Source: Guillardia theta CCMP2712 (taxonomy: Eukaryota > Protista > Cryptophyta). Taken from it: a stretch of DNA of 64,000 nucleotides. The notes under the pieces were generated by a model. It was not told the origin of the DNA. It saw only the letters and a program-made list of their open reading frames with translations, and searched no databases. The stretch is from assembly GCF_000315625.1 (NCBI RefSeq), contig NW_005434557.1, forward strand, positions 50,938 to 114,937, written 5' to 3'. Positions 22,500 to 30,404 of this stretch are shown here, piece after piece (position 1 is the first letter of the stretch; every line of letters starts with the position of its first letter). Position numbers and translations under genes: made by a program.

Positions 22500-25400
22500 T
22501 TTTGTCACATGCAAATGGCAGAGAGCTTCAAGTATCTTCTTCCTTCTCTCAATCCTGCGAGAGGTCAGAGCAAACCTCGTGAGGAACCTCCCTCTGACTT
22601 AGCTGCTCCTGTCAGGTCACGACATATGCTGGAGTCTCCCATGGTCTGCAGGAAAACCTCTACTTGCTGCGGTCACCCGTCAGCGGGAGGCCGCGAGCTT
22701 CGGCCCTCTGCTTGCAAATCCGCGGCGGGATGAATGACAACTCACCCAACGACGACAAGCATTCAGAGAGGGGAGGGAAAACCAAGTCGGGAATACAAGA
22801 AATGTCGCACGAGGAACTGATGAAGATACAGCTCATTTCAAGGGTTCCTCAGATGAAACTCGACGAGCTCAAAGTGATGTACTTGGCGTGACAGACTTTG
22901 TGTGCTGATCCGTTCGCAGGAAGAGCTGAAGAGACGAGGGCTGGAGATCAAAGGAAAGAAACAGGACCTTGTGGACAGACTGAAGGAGGCGATCAGCAAT
23001 GACGTAGCCGTACAGGTGAGACTGCAAGGTCTGATCTGTTTGCTCATCACCTGGAAGGTACCGGTGAAAGTCAGCAGGGAAACTTTGGACAAGAGCTCTG
23101 CGGGCCGCAGGATAGCGGGAGAGAGCATGAGGGCTCCCAGGAGCCAGGCGGAGGCAGCGGCAGACCCTATGGAAGAGAGGAGGATGGAAGCACGAGTAGC
23201 GGATCTTAGAGAGGACGTCTACCTCCCCTCCTCCCCTCCCCCGCCCGAAGTCTACTTGCAGGAACAGAGAGACTTCCGGGAGAACCTCCGCAGACAAGCC
23301 ATGGCGAGCCCGAGAGCCGAGTTCCAGCCCAGAAGCGAACACCTCTTGCGCCCCAGTGACGCCGACATGCTCAGGCAAGCTGCCGACCGTCAGGACGGTT
23401 GGGTTTCTGTTCGCGACCTCGAGACAAAGCGGCAGGAGCAGGAAGCGAACCTGCCGCCGCAGCCTTTCGACCGGCAAGAGTCCCATGGGTTCGGTACGCA
23501 GGCGCAGGGCCGACGGTGGGGGCCGGGGGAGGGCGGGCAGCAAGGCTACAAGGGTGCTCTGAGATGCTCCTTCTGCAATAAAGTAGGACACTCTGCTGCC
23601 CAGTGCTACTTCCGCAAGAACAGCTTCAGCCGAGACTCGAGCGAAAGGTCCTACTATCGTCATTCCAACTTTCAGGGTGCTTTTGGGAACAAGAAGAACG
23701 AGGAGGAGGTGGCGTCGTCATCCTCCCCAGTCCCCATCCTGACCTTTCCTCCCCTGCAGTCTTCGACAATCCCGGAGTACGATGATCTGTCAGAAGAGAG
23801 CACGCCCTCGTCGCAAGGAGGGTGAATGCTCTTGCCTCCCGCTGATGCTTTCGCCTGCTGCTCCAATGATTCACCTCGCTTTTGCATCCCTCCTCTTTTA
23901 TCTTGCTTTCTCTCCCTCCCTCCCGACCTCCCTCCCTTCTTCTCTTCCTCCCTTCCTCCCGCCCTCCTCTCCTTCCCTTCCTCCCTACCTCTCTGCCTTC
24001 CCTCCCTCCTTCCCTCCCCTCCCCTCCCACCCTTGCCTTGCCTTGCCTCTCTACCTACCTACCTACCTACCTACCTCCTTCACATCCACGTCGGGCGGTT
24101 GAGACGTTACAGGTACCATGGCTTCGAGGAGGCATTGGACGACTCGATTCCGGAGCTCATCGATCTTGTTGACGACACGAAGATTGAGCGGCAGAAAGTC
24201 AGCGAGGCGATGAAATGTCCTCATGGGTTGTATAAGGTCTTTGACGTTTGACACCGCGTCTACCTGAACGCTGCCGATAGACCAATACAATCAATTACAG
24301 CAAACGAAGAGCAGACAGGGAGAGAGCGGCAGGTGAGGGGAGGAGAGGAGGTGCTGAGAAGACGAGAGCACGTCGTGACTCGGGGATGAACACAAGGGTT
24401 GTTGAAGATCACTGAGGAGATGAAGGCTTTTTTTCCTGGCGCGAGAGACAACTGCGGTGACCGAGTTCCAGCCTGATCCGTCTGATCCTTTGATTGACGG
24501 AGTTGGCACAGGGACTCTACTCCAACCGGATGTCTACACCGATGAGGAGTTGTACTCGGTCGGATACACCAAGGAGAAGATCGAGACGCTCCGACGACCT
24601 CCATCAGGTGCCCTGCCCTCGAACCTGAGCTTGTCTCATCGCATTCAGAGCGACATGTTCCGTACTTCGAAGAGCTGCTTGCTCCCGTGGAGTCTGCTCG
24701 GTCAGGGGAGGCGCAGGGGAAAGAGGGAACAAGGCAAGAGCTGGAGGAGGAAGCGGGTTGTGAAGGGCCAGTGGAACGAGACACCTTCATAGCTGCCATT
24801 GGAGGCTCCATCACATTCCGGTGATGATCGTGACTGAAAGGATTCAACTCTGACCTTGGGTGTGTTCGCTCGTGTAAGCTTTGATCCCTCGTCTTCCTAT
24901 CAACAAGCCAACCATCTGTGTCAGTATGTCGAGACCAGCAGATTCGAAAAGTTTGTTTTGTTTGAGTGCTTCGAACGGCTGAACGACTCTGATTCAGAGG
25001 AAGTCTGTCGCGGTGGAAGTTCAAGGCAGACATGCTTTGCCCTCGAGACGGACTGGTGTGTGCCGCTGCTTCAAGCTTCAAGAGTGACGAGACTTCAGTC
25101 CGCTCTCTTCTACAAGGATCGCATCTACACATTCGGGGGGCTGGACGATGTCCTGCCATTGTGTTCAAATTGCTTGTCACTTGCCTTTGTAGGACGCGAA
25201 CGATCTCGATAACGTTGAGAGCTGCGGCCTTGACTTTCAATGGCGTCAAGAACGGTTTTCAACACCACGACTTGTCAGTCTCCTCCCGTCGGCATCATGA
25301 GATTGATTGCTTCTTGTAGACAAGCTTTCATTCCACCGCGCTGCTCAACGACCGCATCTACCTAATCGGAGGACAAGGCTTCGATCTGGAAACAAGGCAG

Positions 25401-27732
25401 CCGGCGAGTTGGAGCGCATCTGTAGGGGCGGCGGGTGATACCTGCTCCTCCAGGCATGGTGGAACCAAGTCAGCTGCCTGGATCTCACCACAGGGAGATG
25501 GACTGAGTGTCCGTCTATGAACAGAAAGGTGCTGTTAGCAGCATGCTCCTGACGTGCATGACGAGCAAGGCAGCGCTGCTACTTCCAGGCAGTGTCTGTG
25601 CATGGCAGGATCTACGCCATTGGGGGTTGGAGCACCGAGTCGGAGGTGCTGGACACGAATCTAGTGAGTGACGATGTGAAGGAGGGGAGGAGGGGGTGAC
25701 GAGGGGCAGGGGATTCCGGGACTGAAGTGGGACTTGCGCCACCATATCACCAACACCGTCGAGTCGTTCGATCCACGGCATCTCCAGCTGCTCTCCCTGT
25801 TCAGTCGGTGATGGTGATGCAGAGAAGGGAAGTGGCGAATGGAACCCTCGATGTGTGCTCCGCTACAGGCCGGGGTCAGCAACGTCTCTCAGCTTCAACA
25901 TCCCAAGAAGGTTCTTTGCTCCCTTCAAGCTCCTCCTTGATCACGTTGGCCCAGGTGCAGGATGGTAGCCGATGCTCGTTCGGGGCAGTCGGAGTTGGGC
26001 CGAAAGTCTATGTGGTTGGAGGATACGACGGGTGAGCACGTGGCTGAGCAGACGACCAAACTCAACTCTTGTCAGGAACCACGTAATCGGGTCTGTTGAG
26101 TCGTTGGACGTCCGTGCAGGCCGCTGGGTCGAGGAGGCAGGCCGCTCGCTGCTCCTGACAGCAAGTGAGAAATCTGCAGGCGAGCTTGCAGACTCCGAGG
26201 ATGTGCCTGGCGGTATCAGCGCTCAACTCAAAAGTTAGTCATGCCTTACGCTTGTTTCTCTTGTTTCACCTGCTCGCTCCTGCCTTGCTCTCTTCTACTT
26301 CGCCCTCTTCTACTTCGCTCTCTTCTACTTCGCTCTCTTCTACTTTGCTCTCTTCTACTTTGCTCTCTTCTACTTCGCTCTCTTCTACTTCGCTCTCTTC
26401 TACTTTGCTCTCTTCTGCGCTCTCTTGAAAACTCTCTACTTCAGTTGATTGCGGCGGGAGGATGGGACGGCACGCGAGACCTCAAGGTGGTTGAGACTTA
26501 TGACGGGAGCAGGCGAGAGACGCGAGAGATGGAGCTCGAGCCTCGCTGACGTCATCGGCAGGTGGGACGTCGCGCCTTCTCTCCTTGTCCCTCGCTCCAA
26601 CTTCGCAATTGTGACGTGCGACTCGAGCCTCGATGTGCACGGGGACGTGGACTATGTGAGATGAAACAACCTCGCGCTCTATCAGAAGGACCATCTTCAC
26701 TTACAGCAGCAGTCGCCTCGTAGCTCCTACTCGCCTCGTAGTTCGTACCCGCCTCGTAGCTCGTACCCGCCTCGTAGCTCGTACTCGCCTCGTAGCTCCT
26801 ACTCGCCTCGTAGCTCCTACTCGCCTCGTAGCTCCTACTCGCCTCGTAGCTCCTACTCGCCTCGTAGCTCCTACTCGCCTCGTAGTTCGTACTCGCCTCG
26901 TAGCTCCTACTCGCCTCGTAGCTCCTACTCGCCTCGTAGCTCCTACTCGCCTCGTAGCTCCTACTCGCCTCGTAGCTCCTACTCGCCTCGTAGCTCCTAC
27001 TCGCCTCGTAGCTCCTACTCGCCTCGTAGCTCCTACTCGCCTCGTAGCTCCTACTCGCCTCGTAGCTCCTACTCGCCTCGTAGCTCGTACCCGCCTCGTA
27101 GCTCCTACTCGCCTCGTAGCTCCTACTCGCCTCGTAGCTCGTACCCGCCTCGTAGCTCGTACTCGCCTCGTAGCTCGTACCCGCCTCGTAGCTCCTACTC
27201 GCCTCGTAGCTCCTACTCGCCTCGTAGCTCGTACTCGCCTCGTAGCTCGTACTCGCCTCGTAGCTCGTACTCGCCTCGTAGCTCCTACTCGCCTCGTAGC
27301 TCCTACTCGCCTCGTAGCTCGTACTCGCCTCGTAGCTCGTACTCGCCTCGTAGCTCCTACTCGCCTCGTAGCTCGTACTCGCCTCGTAGCTCCTACTCGC
27401 CTCGTAGCTCGTACCCGCCTCGTAGCTCGTACTCGCCTCGTAGCTCGTACTCGCCTCGTAGCTCGTACTCGCCTCGTAGCTCCTACTCGCCTCGTAGCTC
27501 CTACTCGCCTCGTAGCTCCTACTCGCCTCGTAGCTCCTACTCGCCTCGTAGCTCCTACTCGCCTCGTAGCTCCTACTCGCCTCGTAGCTCGTACTCGCCT
27601 CGTAGCTCCTACTCGCCTCCATGTTGCTCCTCTCGCCCTTCACCTCCACGCCCTTCCTCGCTCCTACTCCTGCTGCTATTCTGCTGGGCTGACCACCCCT
27701 ACCTTAAAACGAAATCACCCTACGTATTGTAG
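22500..27732 (+). CDS. SAP domain + CCHC zinc knuckle + Kelch-repeat protein, probably with a C-terminal (YSPRSS)n tail
   Basis: SAP: MKLDELK|EELKRRGLEIKGKKQDLVDRLKEA. Zn knuckle: CSFCNKVGHSAAQC. Kelch blades: DRIYTFGG, DRIYLIGG, GRIYAIGG, KVYVVGGYDG..SVESLDVRAGRW, LIAAGGWDG..VETYD..GRWDVAPSLLVPRSNF. The gene ends at TGA 26664 unless intron 26656-26706 is spliced, in which case the stop is at 27732. That the SAP part and Kelch part are one gene is inferred. Confidence 0.7.
26713..27618. repeat. 18-bp minisatellite (TCGCCTCGTAGCTCCTAC)n, ~50 copies, three variable positions
   Basis: Direct reading. It reads YSPRSS on + (Kelch frame) or SYEASR on -. Confidence 0.97.
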
Positions 27733-27815: not shown

Positions 27816-30404
27816 ATGGCAAAGCGTGGTGAACAGAGCCATGCGTGTGAGCAGGTGAGAGGGGGAGGGAGAGAGAGGAGAGGGAGGGATAAGAGAAAGG
27901 GAGGAGAGGGAGGGACGAGGACGAGGAGATAGGTTCGACGATGGATGAAGGGGGGGGGGGGGGAAGGAGGCAAGCGGGAGAGAAGAGGAGGGAACCGAGC
28001 GATGAATTCACAAATTTTGATACACTTGTTTTGCTCTTCATCAGATGCTCGGGTTTGTCACAGAGGCTTTCAAAGAAGCTTCGAATCTGCAGAAACGAAT
28101 CGAGCAGAGAAGAAGCGAACTCGACAAACACAAGTCTCAGCTCCTCCTGAGGTCGCTCAAGGAGCGGGGAATCAAGATTGAAAAAGAGACTTCTTCTGCC
28201 ATCAAGCCAAGCAACATCGTCAAGCTCAACGTGGGAGGAACGAAGATAGACGTAAAGAGAAGCACCATCACTCGCTTCTCCTCCAAACTCAAGTGGATGC
28301 TGAGGTGAACTCGTCCTCTCCTCTCCTCCAGCTGAGCCTCTACTAGCGGTCGCTGGGATCACATCTACAAGCTCGACAATGAAGGACGGATTTTCCTCGA
28401 CTATGATGCTGGCTGGTTCGACCCTATCATCAACCACCTGGTGTACCGATCCTCCTCCTCTACCCCATCATCCTCCTCCTCACCACCACCACTCCCCTTC
28501 CTCCCCCTCCCCATCCTCCTCCTCCTCATCATCATCATCAGCAGCAGCACCACCACCACCACCATCTGCATCCTTTCCTCCTGCCTTCCTGTTACTCGCG
28601 CTCACATAATGCGTAGCGGGAGCTCACAATGCAGGACCCGACCATCCCCATACGGCAGCCGAAAGCCAGTCATGGCGATCAGTTCGGATTCCGGCAGCTG
28701 CAGAAGCATCTTGGCTTGGAGAAGCTGTTCTCGAGTGAAGGCGAGGTGGAGGCGGGAGTGATGAAGCCTTGGATGCAGGCCGTCTTGGCAGGAACCATCG
28801 TGACGACATTGGAAGCAGACGGCAGAGACTGTGAGTTCCGCCTCCTCCATCGTGGAAGCCGCGATGGGTTCGAATGCTCGAAGGTGCAGAGCAAGAGCGC
28901 AGGTGTGGTCAACAGCATCACCATCGTACGTGACACGGAAGGGAACGTGTTTGGGGCCTTTGTGGACGTGGGGAGAAGCTTTCACGAGCAATACATTGAG
29001 TCCAGCAAGGCGTTTCTGTTCCACTTGTCCAGCAGAGGCTCACAAGACCCGAAGCTCTACAAGGTCTATCCCGTCAAGGCCGACCAGAAGCACACAGCGG
29101 TGCGAGGAGTCCGAGCTTGCTGTGCCGTGCTGGGAGCTGGGCCGGATCTGAGCATATCGAACGCATGCAACGCCAACAACGAGAGCTCTTGCCACCTGGG
29201 CACAACGTACGAGAACTATGGGAGCCCTCACGCTCTCACCAACGGTCGCGTCAACTTCCAGGTGGCTGAGCTGGAAGTCTGGCAAGTCAAGCTGGAGCTG
29301 GTCGGAGCCGAGGGTGTCAAAGACGCGAACCGCCGAGTGCCGACCAAGTCCGCCTCGCTCTTATCGGAGCTGACGCGAAGGGTCAAGGACATCGACAGCT
29401 GCGTGCAGGAGCTGCTGGGGGAGGGGGTGAGACTGCAGCAGGAGGAGGAGAACTTGATCGAGGACGGGAGAGATCTCGACGACGAGATGGAGTACATGGA
29501 GAAGATGGAAGAGAAGCACAAGGCACAGGAGATCATCTTCTTCAACGTCGGCGGGAGGAAGCATTACACCACCAAACAGACTCTGTCGCTCATCAAGGGT
29601 TCCAAGCTCTACATGCAGTACGCGAGTGGTCAAGTGCAGGTGCCAGAGACTGACTTGGATGACGACGGAGACATCTTCCTTGACATCAACCCCTACTGCT
29701 TCGGCAAGATCCTTTCCCAGCTGCGGCTTAGACGCCTGTACGAGGACCTGCCGGACAAGGAGCAGGACGAGATCAACATCGGCATCGTCGTGGACCCCCA
29801 GTACTTGGAGTCGTTCGATCGCATGTTGAACTTCTACCAGGTCGAGCAGTCCGACTTGGCCTGCTTCCGTTCCTCCATCTTGCCAGCTCGAGAGCGAGTA
29901 ACCAGATTGCTCCAGCTGCTCCGACCCCACATGCAGGAGATCCCTTGCCGATACGCCTCCCTCCTCTTCCGCGGCAGCCGCGATGGTTTCACGAGGGGCC
30001 AGCTGCAGACCAAGTGGAACAATACGAGCAACAAGCTGCTGTTGGTCAAGGACTCCAACAACAACATCTTCGGGGGCTTCGTCGACTCGAAGAACAACAA
30101 CGCTTCCTCTAGCAGAGCCTTCCTCTTCAGCCTCGAGCTCACTGCTGACATCCATCAAGACTCTCTCACTGTCTGCAGGCTGATCGGAGCCATTCCCGAC
30201 GGCTGCGCCTTCAACTTTAACGTGGGCGGCTGCTTCGCCTTCGGTAGTAGGCCTGACCTGTTCCTGTCCGAGAACTGCAACCAGAACCAGCAGAGCTCCT
30301 GCAACCTCGGGCAGACGTTCAACGCTCACAACAACCCTCACCTCCTCACCAGTGGCTCTCTCAACTTCACCGTGATGGAGATGGAAGCCTGGGGCCTTCA
30401 CTAG
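27816..30404 (+). CDS. KCTD-type BTB(T1)-TLDc-BTB-TLDc tandem protein
   Basis: BTB1 IVKLNVGGTKIDVKRSTI..SGRWD..LDNEGRIFLDYDAGWFDPIINHL; TLDc1 LLHRGSRDGF..NSITIVRDTEGNVFGAF..AFLFHL..LGAGPDL..FQVAELEVW; BTB2 IFFNVGGRKHYTTKQTL..DDDGDIFLDINPYCFGKILSQLR; TLDc2 LLFRGSRDGF..IFGGF..FGSRPDL..FTVMEMEAW. Start is ATG 27816 (with intron) or 28045. Confidence 0.9.

What the first reader, a model, noticed from the sequence alone, without database searches (positions are those of the whole stretch)
26656..27732. Minisatellite is probably a hidden exon: ~50 x YSPRSS, an RNA Pol II CTD-like tail on a SAP-CCHC-Kelch protein
Seen: the Kelch ORF stop (26662-26664) lies inside a canonical-looking 51-nt intron (GAC TAT|gtgaga...cacttacag|CAG CAG TCG CCT CGT), a typical intron size here. 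Splicing gives DY-QQSPRSS(YSPRSS)~50..* open to 27732. In this frame the commonest repeat variant (TCC/TCG) and AGC/AGT are silent and the third gives YPPRSS, whereas all three change residues in the - strand ORF called by the track. Known: the CTD consensus is YSPTSPS; SAP and CCHC domains bind nucleic acids; SP and RS dipeptides are CDK/SRPK-type sites. Inference: a phosphorylatable CTD-mimic scaffold on a nucleic-acid-binding beta-propeller protein.
Basis: partly seen in the sequence, partly recalled or inferred. Interest (0 to 1): 0.8.

Follow-up and report, generated by a model that had tools for sequence, protein, structure and literature searches.

The report
Repeat array: possible hidden tail exon
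A 50-copy 18-base repeat behind a SAP/zinc-knuckle/Kelch gene of the alga Guillardia theta may be spliced on as a serine-, arginine- and tyrosine-rich protein tail, but I could get no RNA or orthologue evidence, and it does not meet the tests for an RNA polymerase II CTD look-alike.

Summary
An 18-nt array of 50 units lies at 26713-27619. The + frame is open from 26707 to TAG 27730-27732. The in-frame TGA (26662-26664) sits inside a 51-nt GTGAGA...TTACAG segment whose removal joins ...HGDVDY to QQSPRSS(YSPRSS)n.

The genome is Guillardia theta CCMP2712. The public annotation cuts the gene at 24824, leaves a 91-aa Kelch scrap and places a 101-aa minus-strand model inside the array.

For the hidden exon:
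- a strong donor two codons before the stop
- intron size typical of this gene (41-60 nt)
- donor at the same place in the Kelch unit as two other introns
- period a multiple of 3
- one open 1158-codon spliced model

No weight either way: four of six frames are open, only three columns vary, and CT-rich arrays fill the non-coding DNA here.

Protein and metagenome searches found no transcript-derived protein, no orthologue beyond the SAP part and no similar tail.

My estimates: coding tail about 0.55, untranslated minisatellite about 0.27, intronic about 0.13. The tail is not CTD-like by period, by the S5-P6 motif or by Pfam; it is nearer a loose RS-like basic tail. Modest interest.

The parts
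22802..26655 (+). Inferred SAP-CCHC-Kelch gene, ATG 22802 to the last Kelch codon. About 19 small exons; 819 aa if it ends at TGA 26664. The public model GUITHDRAFT_146114 starts further upstream (22338) and stops at 24824.
   Evidence: Searches give the public model and its introns. Searches give the exon anchors and frame-keeping GT/GC-AG introns. One search shows the spliced model has no internal stop. RNA-like runs hold 0.47, 0.46 and 0.43 of the words of 22800-26712; the whole spliced model predicts 0.49 and the public model alone 0.30.
22802..23018 (+). SAP domain, split by the intron 22874-22919.
   Evidence: Pfam PF02037, E 3.1e-8. P0002 and P0003 carry PF02037.
23565..23606 (+). CCHC zinc knuckle, C-x2-C-x4-H-x4-C.
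   Evidence: Read directly. Conserved in Hanusia phi P0003. Pfam gave only zf-C2H2_10, just under its cut-off.
24789..26655 (+). Kelch repeat region in short exons; seven GG-type units, the first and last partial.
   Evidence: Kelch_1 hits on the pieces 25320-25403, 25589-25663, 25955-26029 and 26445-26510 (E 3e-5 to 5e-3, two above Pfam's cut-off) and on 25727-26035. The public annotation flags a 91-aa Kelch scrap.
26656..26706 (+). Candidate 51-nt phase-0 intron, GTGAGA...CTTACAG, holding the in-frame TGA 26662-26664.
   Evidence: The length falls within the local range of 41-60 nt. Not tested on RNA.
26707..27732 (+). Candidate terminal coding exon: QQ, 50 hexads (43 YSPRSS, 6 YPPRSS, 1 QSPRSS), 39 further residues, then TAG.
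   Evidence: Composition S 44%, P 19%, R 15%, Y 15%; pI 10.8; 54 basic residues against 1 acidic.
26713..27619 (.). 18-nt tandem array, 50.4 copies, 96% matches, no indels, three variable columns.
27610..27669 (.). About three decayed units at the 3' edge, with indels of +3, -1, -1, +1 and -1, so the YSPRSS reading is not kept there. The 5' edge is sharp and shows no decayed copies.
   Evidence: alignment score 43 against 13.7 +/- 2.5 for shuffles; the upstream flank scores 13 against 11.2 +/- 2.0.
26552..27649 (-). Minus-strand ORF of 365 aa, (SYEASR)n. The public annotation holds a 101-aa partial model at 26756-27058. Probably spurious.
   Evidence: All three variant types change residues in this frame. 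It overlaps the last Kelch exon in antisense.

Best explanation
The array is most likely the last coding exon of one SAP-CCHC-Kelch gene of Guillardia theta.

The spliceosome removes the 51-nt intron 26656-26706 together with the TGA inside it. The reading frame then runs from ...HGDVDY into QQSPRSS and about 50 hexads of YSPRSS/YPPRSS, ending at TAG 27730-27732. That gives a protein of about 1158 aa counted from ATG 22802.

The tail would be a young, species-specific, strongly basic and disordered S/R/P/Y region. Its units are 96% identical and no relative was found anywhere. It would carry 47 SP and 50 RS dipeptides. This is a loose RS-like phosphorylatable low-complexity tail on a nuclear nucleic-acid-binding protein, not a copy of the Pol II CTD.

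What is shown and what is inferred:
- Shown: the sequence features and the domain content of the gene.
- Inferred: the splicing, the translation and any phosphorylation. Retention of the intron would give a short isoform ending ...DYVR.
For: - The donor GTGAGA starts two codons before the stop. GTGAG occurs about 1.2 times per 1000 positions per strand in this window. Its chance of falling within 9 nt of a given stop is therefore about 1%, and about 0.3% with a suitable acceptor as well.
- The acceptor CTTACAG has 9 of 12 pyrimidines before it. It is the first usable AG at 51 nt, within the 41-60 nt range of the gene's other introns.
- The donor follows G-D-V-D-Y. The introns at 25150 and 26032 follow GGLDD and GGYDG in other Kelch units, which is the same position (aligned by eye).
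- The intron length is a multiple of 3 and it holds an in-frame stop.
- The array period of 18 is a multiple of 3, there are no indels, and the joined frame is open.
- A stop-free model of 19-20 exons can be built.
- RNA-like runs hold as many words as a fully spliced SAP-to-Kelch mRNA predicts: 0.47 observed against 0.49 predicted. The gene is therefore probably expressed up to the donor.
- The public models here are plainly fragmentary, so the absence of the tail from the annotation counts for little.
Against: - There is no RNA evidence.
- No protein with this tail exists among candidates of 195-621 aa in 5.8 billion sequences.
- No orthologue reaches the Kelch end.
- Four of the six frames are open across the array.
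- Only three columns vary, so the silent-site argument is not significant.
- The window holds about 30 other arrays, mostly CT-rich, many with periods not divisible by 3. Two of them lie in introns of this same gene.
- The array is 70% pyrimidine, like the introns (64%) and unlike the exons (46%). An S/P/Y-rich coding sequence would force this composition too.
- Decayed units at the 3' edge do not keep the frame.
- Arg is coded by CGT, the rarest Arg codon in my rough table.
- Only 84 nt separate TAG 27732 from the annotated start of the next gene at 27816.
Confidence: 0.55

Rival explanations
1. The gene ends at TGA 26664 (...HGDVDYVR). The array is an untranslated minisatellite in the 3'UTR or the intergenic spacer, one of the many pyrimidine-rich arrays of this genome. 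The GTGAGA is a chance or fossil donor, for instance a relic of the intron that sits at this place in other Kelch units.
For: - CT-rich arrays are abundant in non-coding DNA here, including two introns of this gene.
- Four of six frames are open, so an open frame means little.
- The array has intron-like pyrimidine content.
- The decayed 3' units do not keep the frame.
- No similar protein tail exists anywhere searched.
- By eye, the propeller looks complete at the last exon. The N-terminal partial unit could supply strands 2 to 4 and the last unit strand 1.
Against: If the transcript extends 60 nt or more past the stop, such a short canonical intron should be recognised by the spliceosome.
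Confidence: 0.27
2. The donor at 26656 is used, but with another acceptor.

(a) One option is an acceptor-like CCTCGTAG inside the array. The first is at 26723, giving a 68-nt intron. That shifts the frame and ends the protein after five residues (LLLAS, then stop).

(b) The other option is a far acceptor beyond the array, which would make the array intronic. Acceptor 28044 before exon 2 of the BTB/TLDc gene is also phase 0. It would fuse Kelch in frame to that protein across a 1389-nt intron.
For: - Every unit carries a pyrimidine tract followed by TAG.
- The two longest introns of this gene (211 and 291 nt) also carry CT-rich repeats.
- Donor 26656 and acceptor 28044 are both phase 0.
- Kelch and BTB domains often occur together in one protein (own knowledge).
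Against: - The nearest good acceptor, at the modal length, is 26706.
- Introns longer than 300 nt are not seen in this gene.
- The BTB/TLDc gene has its own annotated ATG exon at 27816.
- Phase agreement alone has a 1 in 3 chance.
- In known BTB-Kelch proteins BTB precedes Kelch.
Confidence: 0.13
3. The minus-strand ORF (SYEASR)n, annotated publicly as a 101-aa partial model, is the real gene.
For: It is open for 365 codons, and a public model exists.
Against: - The public model is partial.
- The 365-codon ORF relies on a GTG start.
- It overlaps the last Kelch exon in antisense.
- All three variant types change residues in this frame.
- Its only Pfam match is a low-complexity hit below the cut-off.
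Confidence: 0.02

Closest known systems
RNA polymerase II Rpb1 C-terminal domain (YSPTSPS heptads)
   Same: A C-terminal tandem array of short Y/S/P-rich units. Positions 1-3 (Y-S-P) and position 5 (S) agree, giving an S-P site in most units.
   Different: - The period is 6, not 7.
- Arg replaces Thr4.
- There is no S5-P6 pair (0 YSPxSP).
- Pfam finds no CTD repeat at E up to 10.
- It sits on a SAP-CCHC-Kelch protein, not on Rpb1.
- It is strongly basic (pI 10.8).
- The array is young and homogenised.
RS domains of SR and SR-related proteins, e.g. SRSF7/9G8, which pairs a CCHC knuckle with an RS domain, and SAP-bearing Acinus/SAFB-type nuclear proteins (own knowledge)
   Same: A long, basic, serine/arginine-rich disordered C-terminal region on a protein with nucleic-acid-binding modules. 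There are 50 RS and 47 SP dipeptides, which are the substrate types of SRPK/CLK and CDK kinases.
   Different: - RS dipeptides are never consecutive and cover about 29% of residues, below the usual definition of more than 40% with consecutive RS/SR.
- No RRM was found.
- Every sixth residue is tyrosine.
- A Kelch propeller is present.
Coding minisatellites and low-complexity repeat tails of protist proteins; non-coding CT-rich minisatellites of Guillardia theta
   Same: Near-identical short units kept uniform by slippage or recombination, at a single locus and specific to the species. The same window holds about 30 other arrays.
   Different: It is by far the longest array of the window (907 nt). 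Its period is a multiple of 3. Its 5' edge lies 6 nt after an acceptor-like AG that is in frame with the upstream gene.

Membership tests
Pol II CTD-type repeat (Pfam PF05001, RNA_pol_Rpb1_R) | Heptad period | tested here: not met
   The period is 18 nt, i.e. 6 residues.
Pol II CTD-type repeat (Pfam PF05001, RNA_pol_Rpb1_R) | Consensus Y1-S2-P3-T4-S5-P6-S7 with both S2-P3 and S5-P6 | tested here: not met
   Y-S-P and S5 are present, but there is R at position 4 and S at position 6. There are 44 YSP and 0 YSPxSP.
Pol II CTD-type repeat (Pfam PF05001, RNA_pol_Rpb1_R) | Match to the family profile | tested here: not met
   hmmscan of the 341-aa tail against Pfam at E up to 10 found 0 families.
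Pol II CTD-type repeat (Pfam PF05001, RNA_pol_Rpb1_R) | Phosphorylation by CTD kinases and binding by CID, WW or capping-enzyme readers | not testable with these tools
   Needs biochemistry.
RS domain (SR protein definition, Manley and Krainer 2010; own knowledge) | At least 50 residues, more than 40% RS content, consecutive RS/SR dipeptides | tested here: not met
   The tail is 341 aa with 50 RS dipeptides (about 29% of residues) and 0 RSRS.
RS domain (SR protein definition, Manley and Krainer 2010; own knowledge) | N-terminal RRM | tested here: not met
   Pfam on the ORF pieces gave SAP, a zinc-finger hit and Kelch, but no RRM. Small exons were scanned piecewise only.
Short spliceosomal GT-AG intron of G. 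theta | Consensus donor, pyrimidine tract plus YAG, and length in the local range | tested here: met
   GTGAGA; CATCTTCACTTACAG; 51 nt against 41-60 nt for the gene's other short introns.
Short spliceosomal GT-AG intron of G. theta | Removed in RNA (junction reads) | not testable with these tools
No transcript-derived proteins are in the libraries.
Kelch beta-propeller | Several Kelch motifs matching the profile | tested here: met
   Kelch_1 on five separate pieces, E 3.4e-5 to 4.6e-3, three at or above the 20.1-bit cut-off.
SAP domain | Match to PF02037 | tested here: met
   E 3.1e-8, 33.5 bits against a cut-off of 23.9.
CCHC zinc knuckle | C-x2-C-x4-H-x4-C | tested here: inconclusive
   The pattern is present at 23565-23606 and conserved in Hanusia phi. 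Pfam reports only zf-C2H2_10, at 25.2 bits against a cut-off of 26.2.

The most novel reading that the evidence does not exclude
The spliced product is real, and its roughly 50 YSPRSS hexads act as a phosphorylation-dependent docking platform on a SAP-CCHC-Kelch chromatin or RNA protein. That would make it a functional analogue of the Pol II CTD or of an RS domain, recruiting CTD or RS readers, and it would have arisen very recently by minisatellite expansion in one cryptophyte lineage.
Probability: 0.06. Interest if true: 0.7.

Novelty: new member of a known kind. Interest (0 to 1): 0.3.

Why it matters
If the junction is confirmed, three things follow.
- The public Guillardia theta models at this locus should be replaced by one gene of about 1160 aa. 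Those models are a truncated SAP gene, a Kelch scrap and a minus-strand ORF in the array.
- SAP + CCHC + Kelch would be documented as an unusual architecture.
- The locus would be a clean example of a minisatellite giving a nuclear protein a very young phosphorylatable low-complexity tail.

If the junction is not confirmed, this is one more non-coding array in a genome full of them. Either way, it shows that ORF-based tracks mislead in this intron-rich alga.

Tried and rejected
- **Read laying** on 22600-26780 with X16, X1, X2 and X3.
- **Word search with the tail frame**. The one hit is an unrelated bacterial-type repeat protein.
- **Word searches with the SAP piece and with the whole of P0002**. 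They found only the public model and a 301-aa Hanusia phi fragment. That fragment ends at the G. theta exon-3 boundary and has an odd N-terminus, so it was probably read from an unspliced contig.
- **Exhaustive representative search with the Kelch exon 24880-25149**. No relative was found, not even from G. theta.
- **Exact look-ups of P0003 and of the 591-aa neighbour ORF**. Neither is on record, so no Logan G. theta contigs could be reached.
- **Metagenome scans** for the exon end and for two array units. Both gave 0 matches.
- **Papers**. Nothing on the locus tag, on the hexad, or on CTD-like repeat mimics; a fourth search, for G. theta intron lengths, listed papers that I did not read.
- **ESM Atlas by features**. 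Only noise, with scores of 0.82 or less and low recognition.
- **Simple GTGAG-plus-acceptor scan**. It does not separate real from simulated sequence. I used it only to set the chance rate.
- **Codon usage and strand composition**. No power.
- **My by-eye impression that the candidate intron holds a decayed repeat unit.** An alignment test rejected it.

Full report
**What is there.**
- The frame of the last Kelch piece reads GAC TAT GTG AGA TGA, with the TGA at 26662-26664.
- The 51 bases 26656-26706 run from GTGAGA to CTTACAG.
- From 26707 the same frame is open for 341 codons, to TAG 27730-27732.
- Tandem Repeats Finder reports an 18-nt array at 26713-27619 with 50.4 copies, 96% matches and no indels.
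- A pattern search finds 50 units in register against 0.03 expected by chance, and none elsewhere in the window.
- Translated, the array gives 43 YSPRSS, 6 YPPRSS and 1 QSPRSS.
- Three columns vary. Two are silent third positions in this frame and one gives S to P. All three change the residue in the minus-strand ORF 26552-27649.

**Where it is.** The SAP piece matches GUITHDRAFT_146114 of Guillardia theta CCMP2712 (538 aa) at 95% identity. The record is JH993081.1. The public annotation of this locus is fragmentary.
- The SAP model stops at window 24824.
- A 91-aa model with a faint Kelch hit lies at 25517-25968.
- A 101-aa partial model lies on the minus strand inside the array (26756-27058).
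- A BTB/TLDc gene starts at 27816.

No public model reads the array in the + frame.

**The gene.** I located peptide anchors in the three + frames. Between them I chose GT/GC-AG introns that keep the frame.
- The result is a stop-free model from ATG 22802. It has 819 codons if it ends at TGA 26664, and 1158 if the 51-nt segment is removed.
- The short introns are 41-60 nt. Three longer ones are 179, 211 and 291 nt, and the 211- and 291-nt ones carry CT-rich repeats.
- SAP is significant (E 3e-8).
- The knuckle C-x2-C-x4-H-x4-C is at 23565-23606 and is conserved in Hanusia phi.
- Five separate small pieces hit Kelch_1.

The one-gene reading has indirect support. RNA-like runs hold 0.47, 0.46 and 0.43 of the sampled words of 22800-26712. 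My spliced model predicts 0.49 and the public model alone 0.30. Those runs are only guessed to be RNA.

**Evidence for the hidden exon.**
- GTGAG occurs about 1.2 times per 1000 positions per strand here. A donor of this quality within 9 nt of a given stop has about a 1% chance, and about 0.3% together with a suitable acceptor.
- The acceptor is the first usable AG at the modal intron length.
- By eye, the donor follows G-D-V-D-Y just as the introns at 25150 and 26032 follow GGLDD and GGYDG. This is therefore a recurrent intron position of the Kelch unit.
- The period is a multiple of 3, and the joined frame is one of the open ones.

**Evidence that carries no weight or points the other way.**
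- Four of six frames are open across the array.
- With three variable sites, two silent changes arise by chance about 17% of the time.
- The window has about 30 other arrays, mostly CT-rich and often with periods not divisible by 3.
- The array's pyrimidine share is 0.70, against 0.64 for introns and 0.46 for exons. The encoded residues would force this composition anyway.
- About three decayed units at the 3' edge carry frame-breaking indels, so the peptide repeat was not preserved there.
- The 5' edge is sharp, 6 nt after the acceptor AG. The candidate intron shows no similarity to the unit.
- Every unit itself contains an acceptor-like CCTCGTAG. Use of the first one (26723) would end the protein after five residues.
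- Donor 26656 and the acceptor before exon 2 of the BTB/TLDc gene (28044) are both phase 0. An in-frame fusion across a 1389-nt intron cannot be excluded.

**The decisive test failed.** The tool itself says this is evidence of nothing. The call was still counted. Every other route to transcripts or orthologues was blank.
- No protein of 195-621 aa carries such a tail.
- The only relative of the SAP part is a 301-aa Hanusia phi fragment. It ends exactly at the G. theta exon-3 boundary and looks unspliced.
- The exhaustive search with a Kelch exon found nothing, not even from G. theta.
- Exact look-ups, two metagenome scans and the papers were all empty.

**What the tail would be.** It would have S 44%, P 19%, R 15% and Y 15%, a pI of 10.8, and 54 basic residues against 1 acidic. 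It would carry 47 SP and 50 RS dipeptides, no consecutive RS and no YSPxSP.
- It fails the CTD tests on period, on the S5-P6 pair and on the Pfam profile.
- It also fails the strict RS-domain definition.
- It works most like a loose RS-type, phosphorylatable, disordered basic tail. The CTD-mimic function is a conjecture with nothing behind it yet.

**Verdict.** My estimates are:
- coding terminal exon, about 0.55
- untranslated minisatellite with a chance or fossil donor, about 0.27
- donor used with another acceptor, about 0.13
- minus-strand ORF, about 0.02

The array is young, confined to one locus, and so far found only in this species. Interest is modest until junction reads exist.

Noticed in passing
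window 24821-24878: The public model GUITHDRAFT_146114 seems to end at a stop inside an unrecognised 58-nt intron (CCG|GTGATG...GTGTAAG|C). Splicing it continues ...IGGSITF-R-FDPSSS into the Kelch exons.
   Followed up: partly
window 25404-25453 and 26513-26561: The frame-keeping model needs two GC-AG introns (GCGAGT, GCGAGA). No GT donor fits at either place.
   Followed up: partly
window 26234-26444 and 23822-24112: The two longest introns of the gene carry pyrimidine-rich tandem repeats: a 15-nt array of 8.7 copies, and a CTCC-type array. In this gene, repeats in introns are normal.
   Followed up: partly
P0003 (Hanusia phi, EukProt): The only relative of the SAP-CCHC part is 55% identical. 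It ends at the same GG where G. theta exon 3 ends, and its N-terminus does not align. It was probably translated from an unspliced contig.
   Followed up: partly
window 26656 and 28044: The Kelch donor and the acceptor of exon 2 of the BTB/TLDc gene are both phase 0. A Kelch-BTB-TLDc fusion transcript is possible on paper.
   Followed up: no
whole window: The window holds about 30 distinct tandem arrays (47 Tandem Repeats Finder rows), most of them CT-rich on one strand. GTGAG is rarer in the real sequence than in a first-order Markov simulation (151 against 198).
   Followed up: no
window 23926-23977: read laying refuses these places (CT-rich low complexity inside an intron). Any future laying must start beside them.
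   Followed up: no
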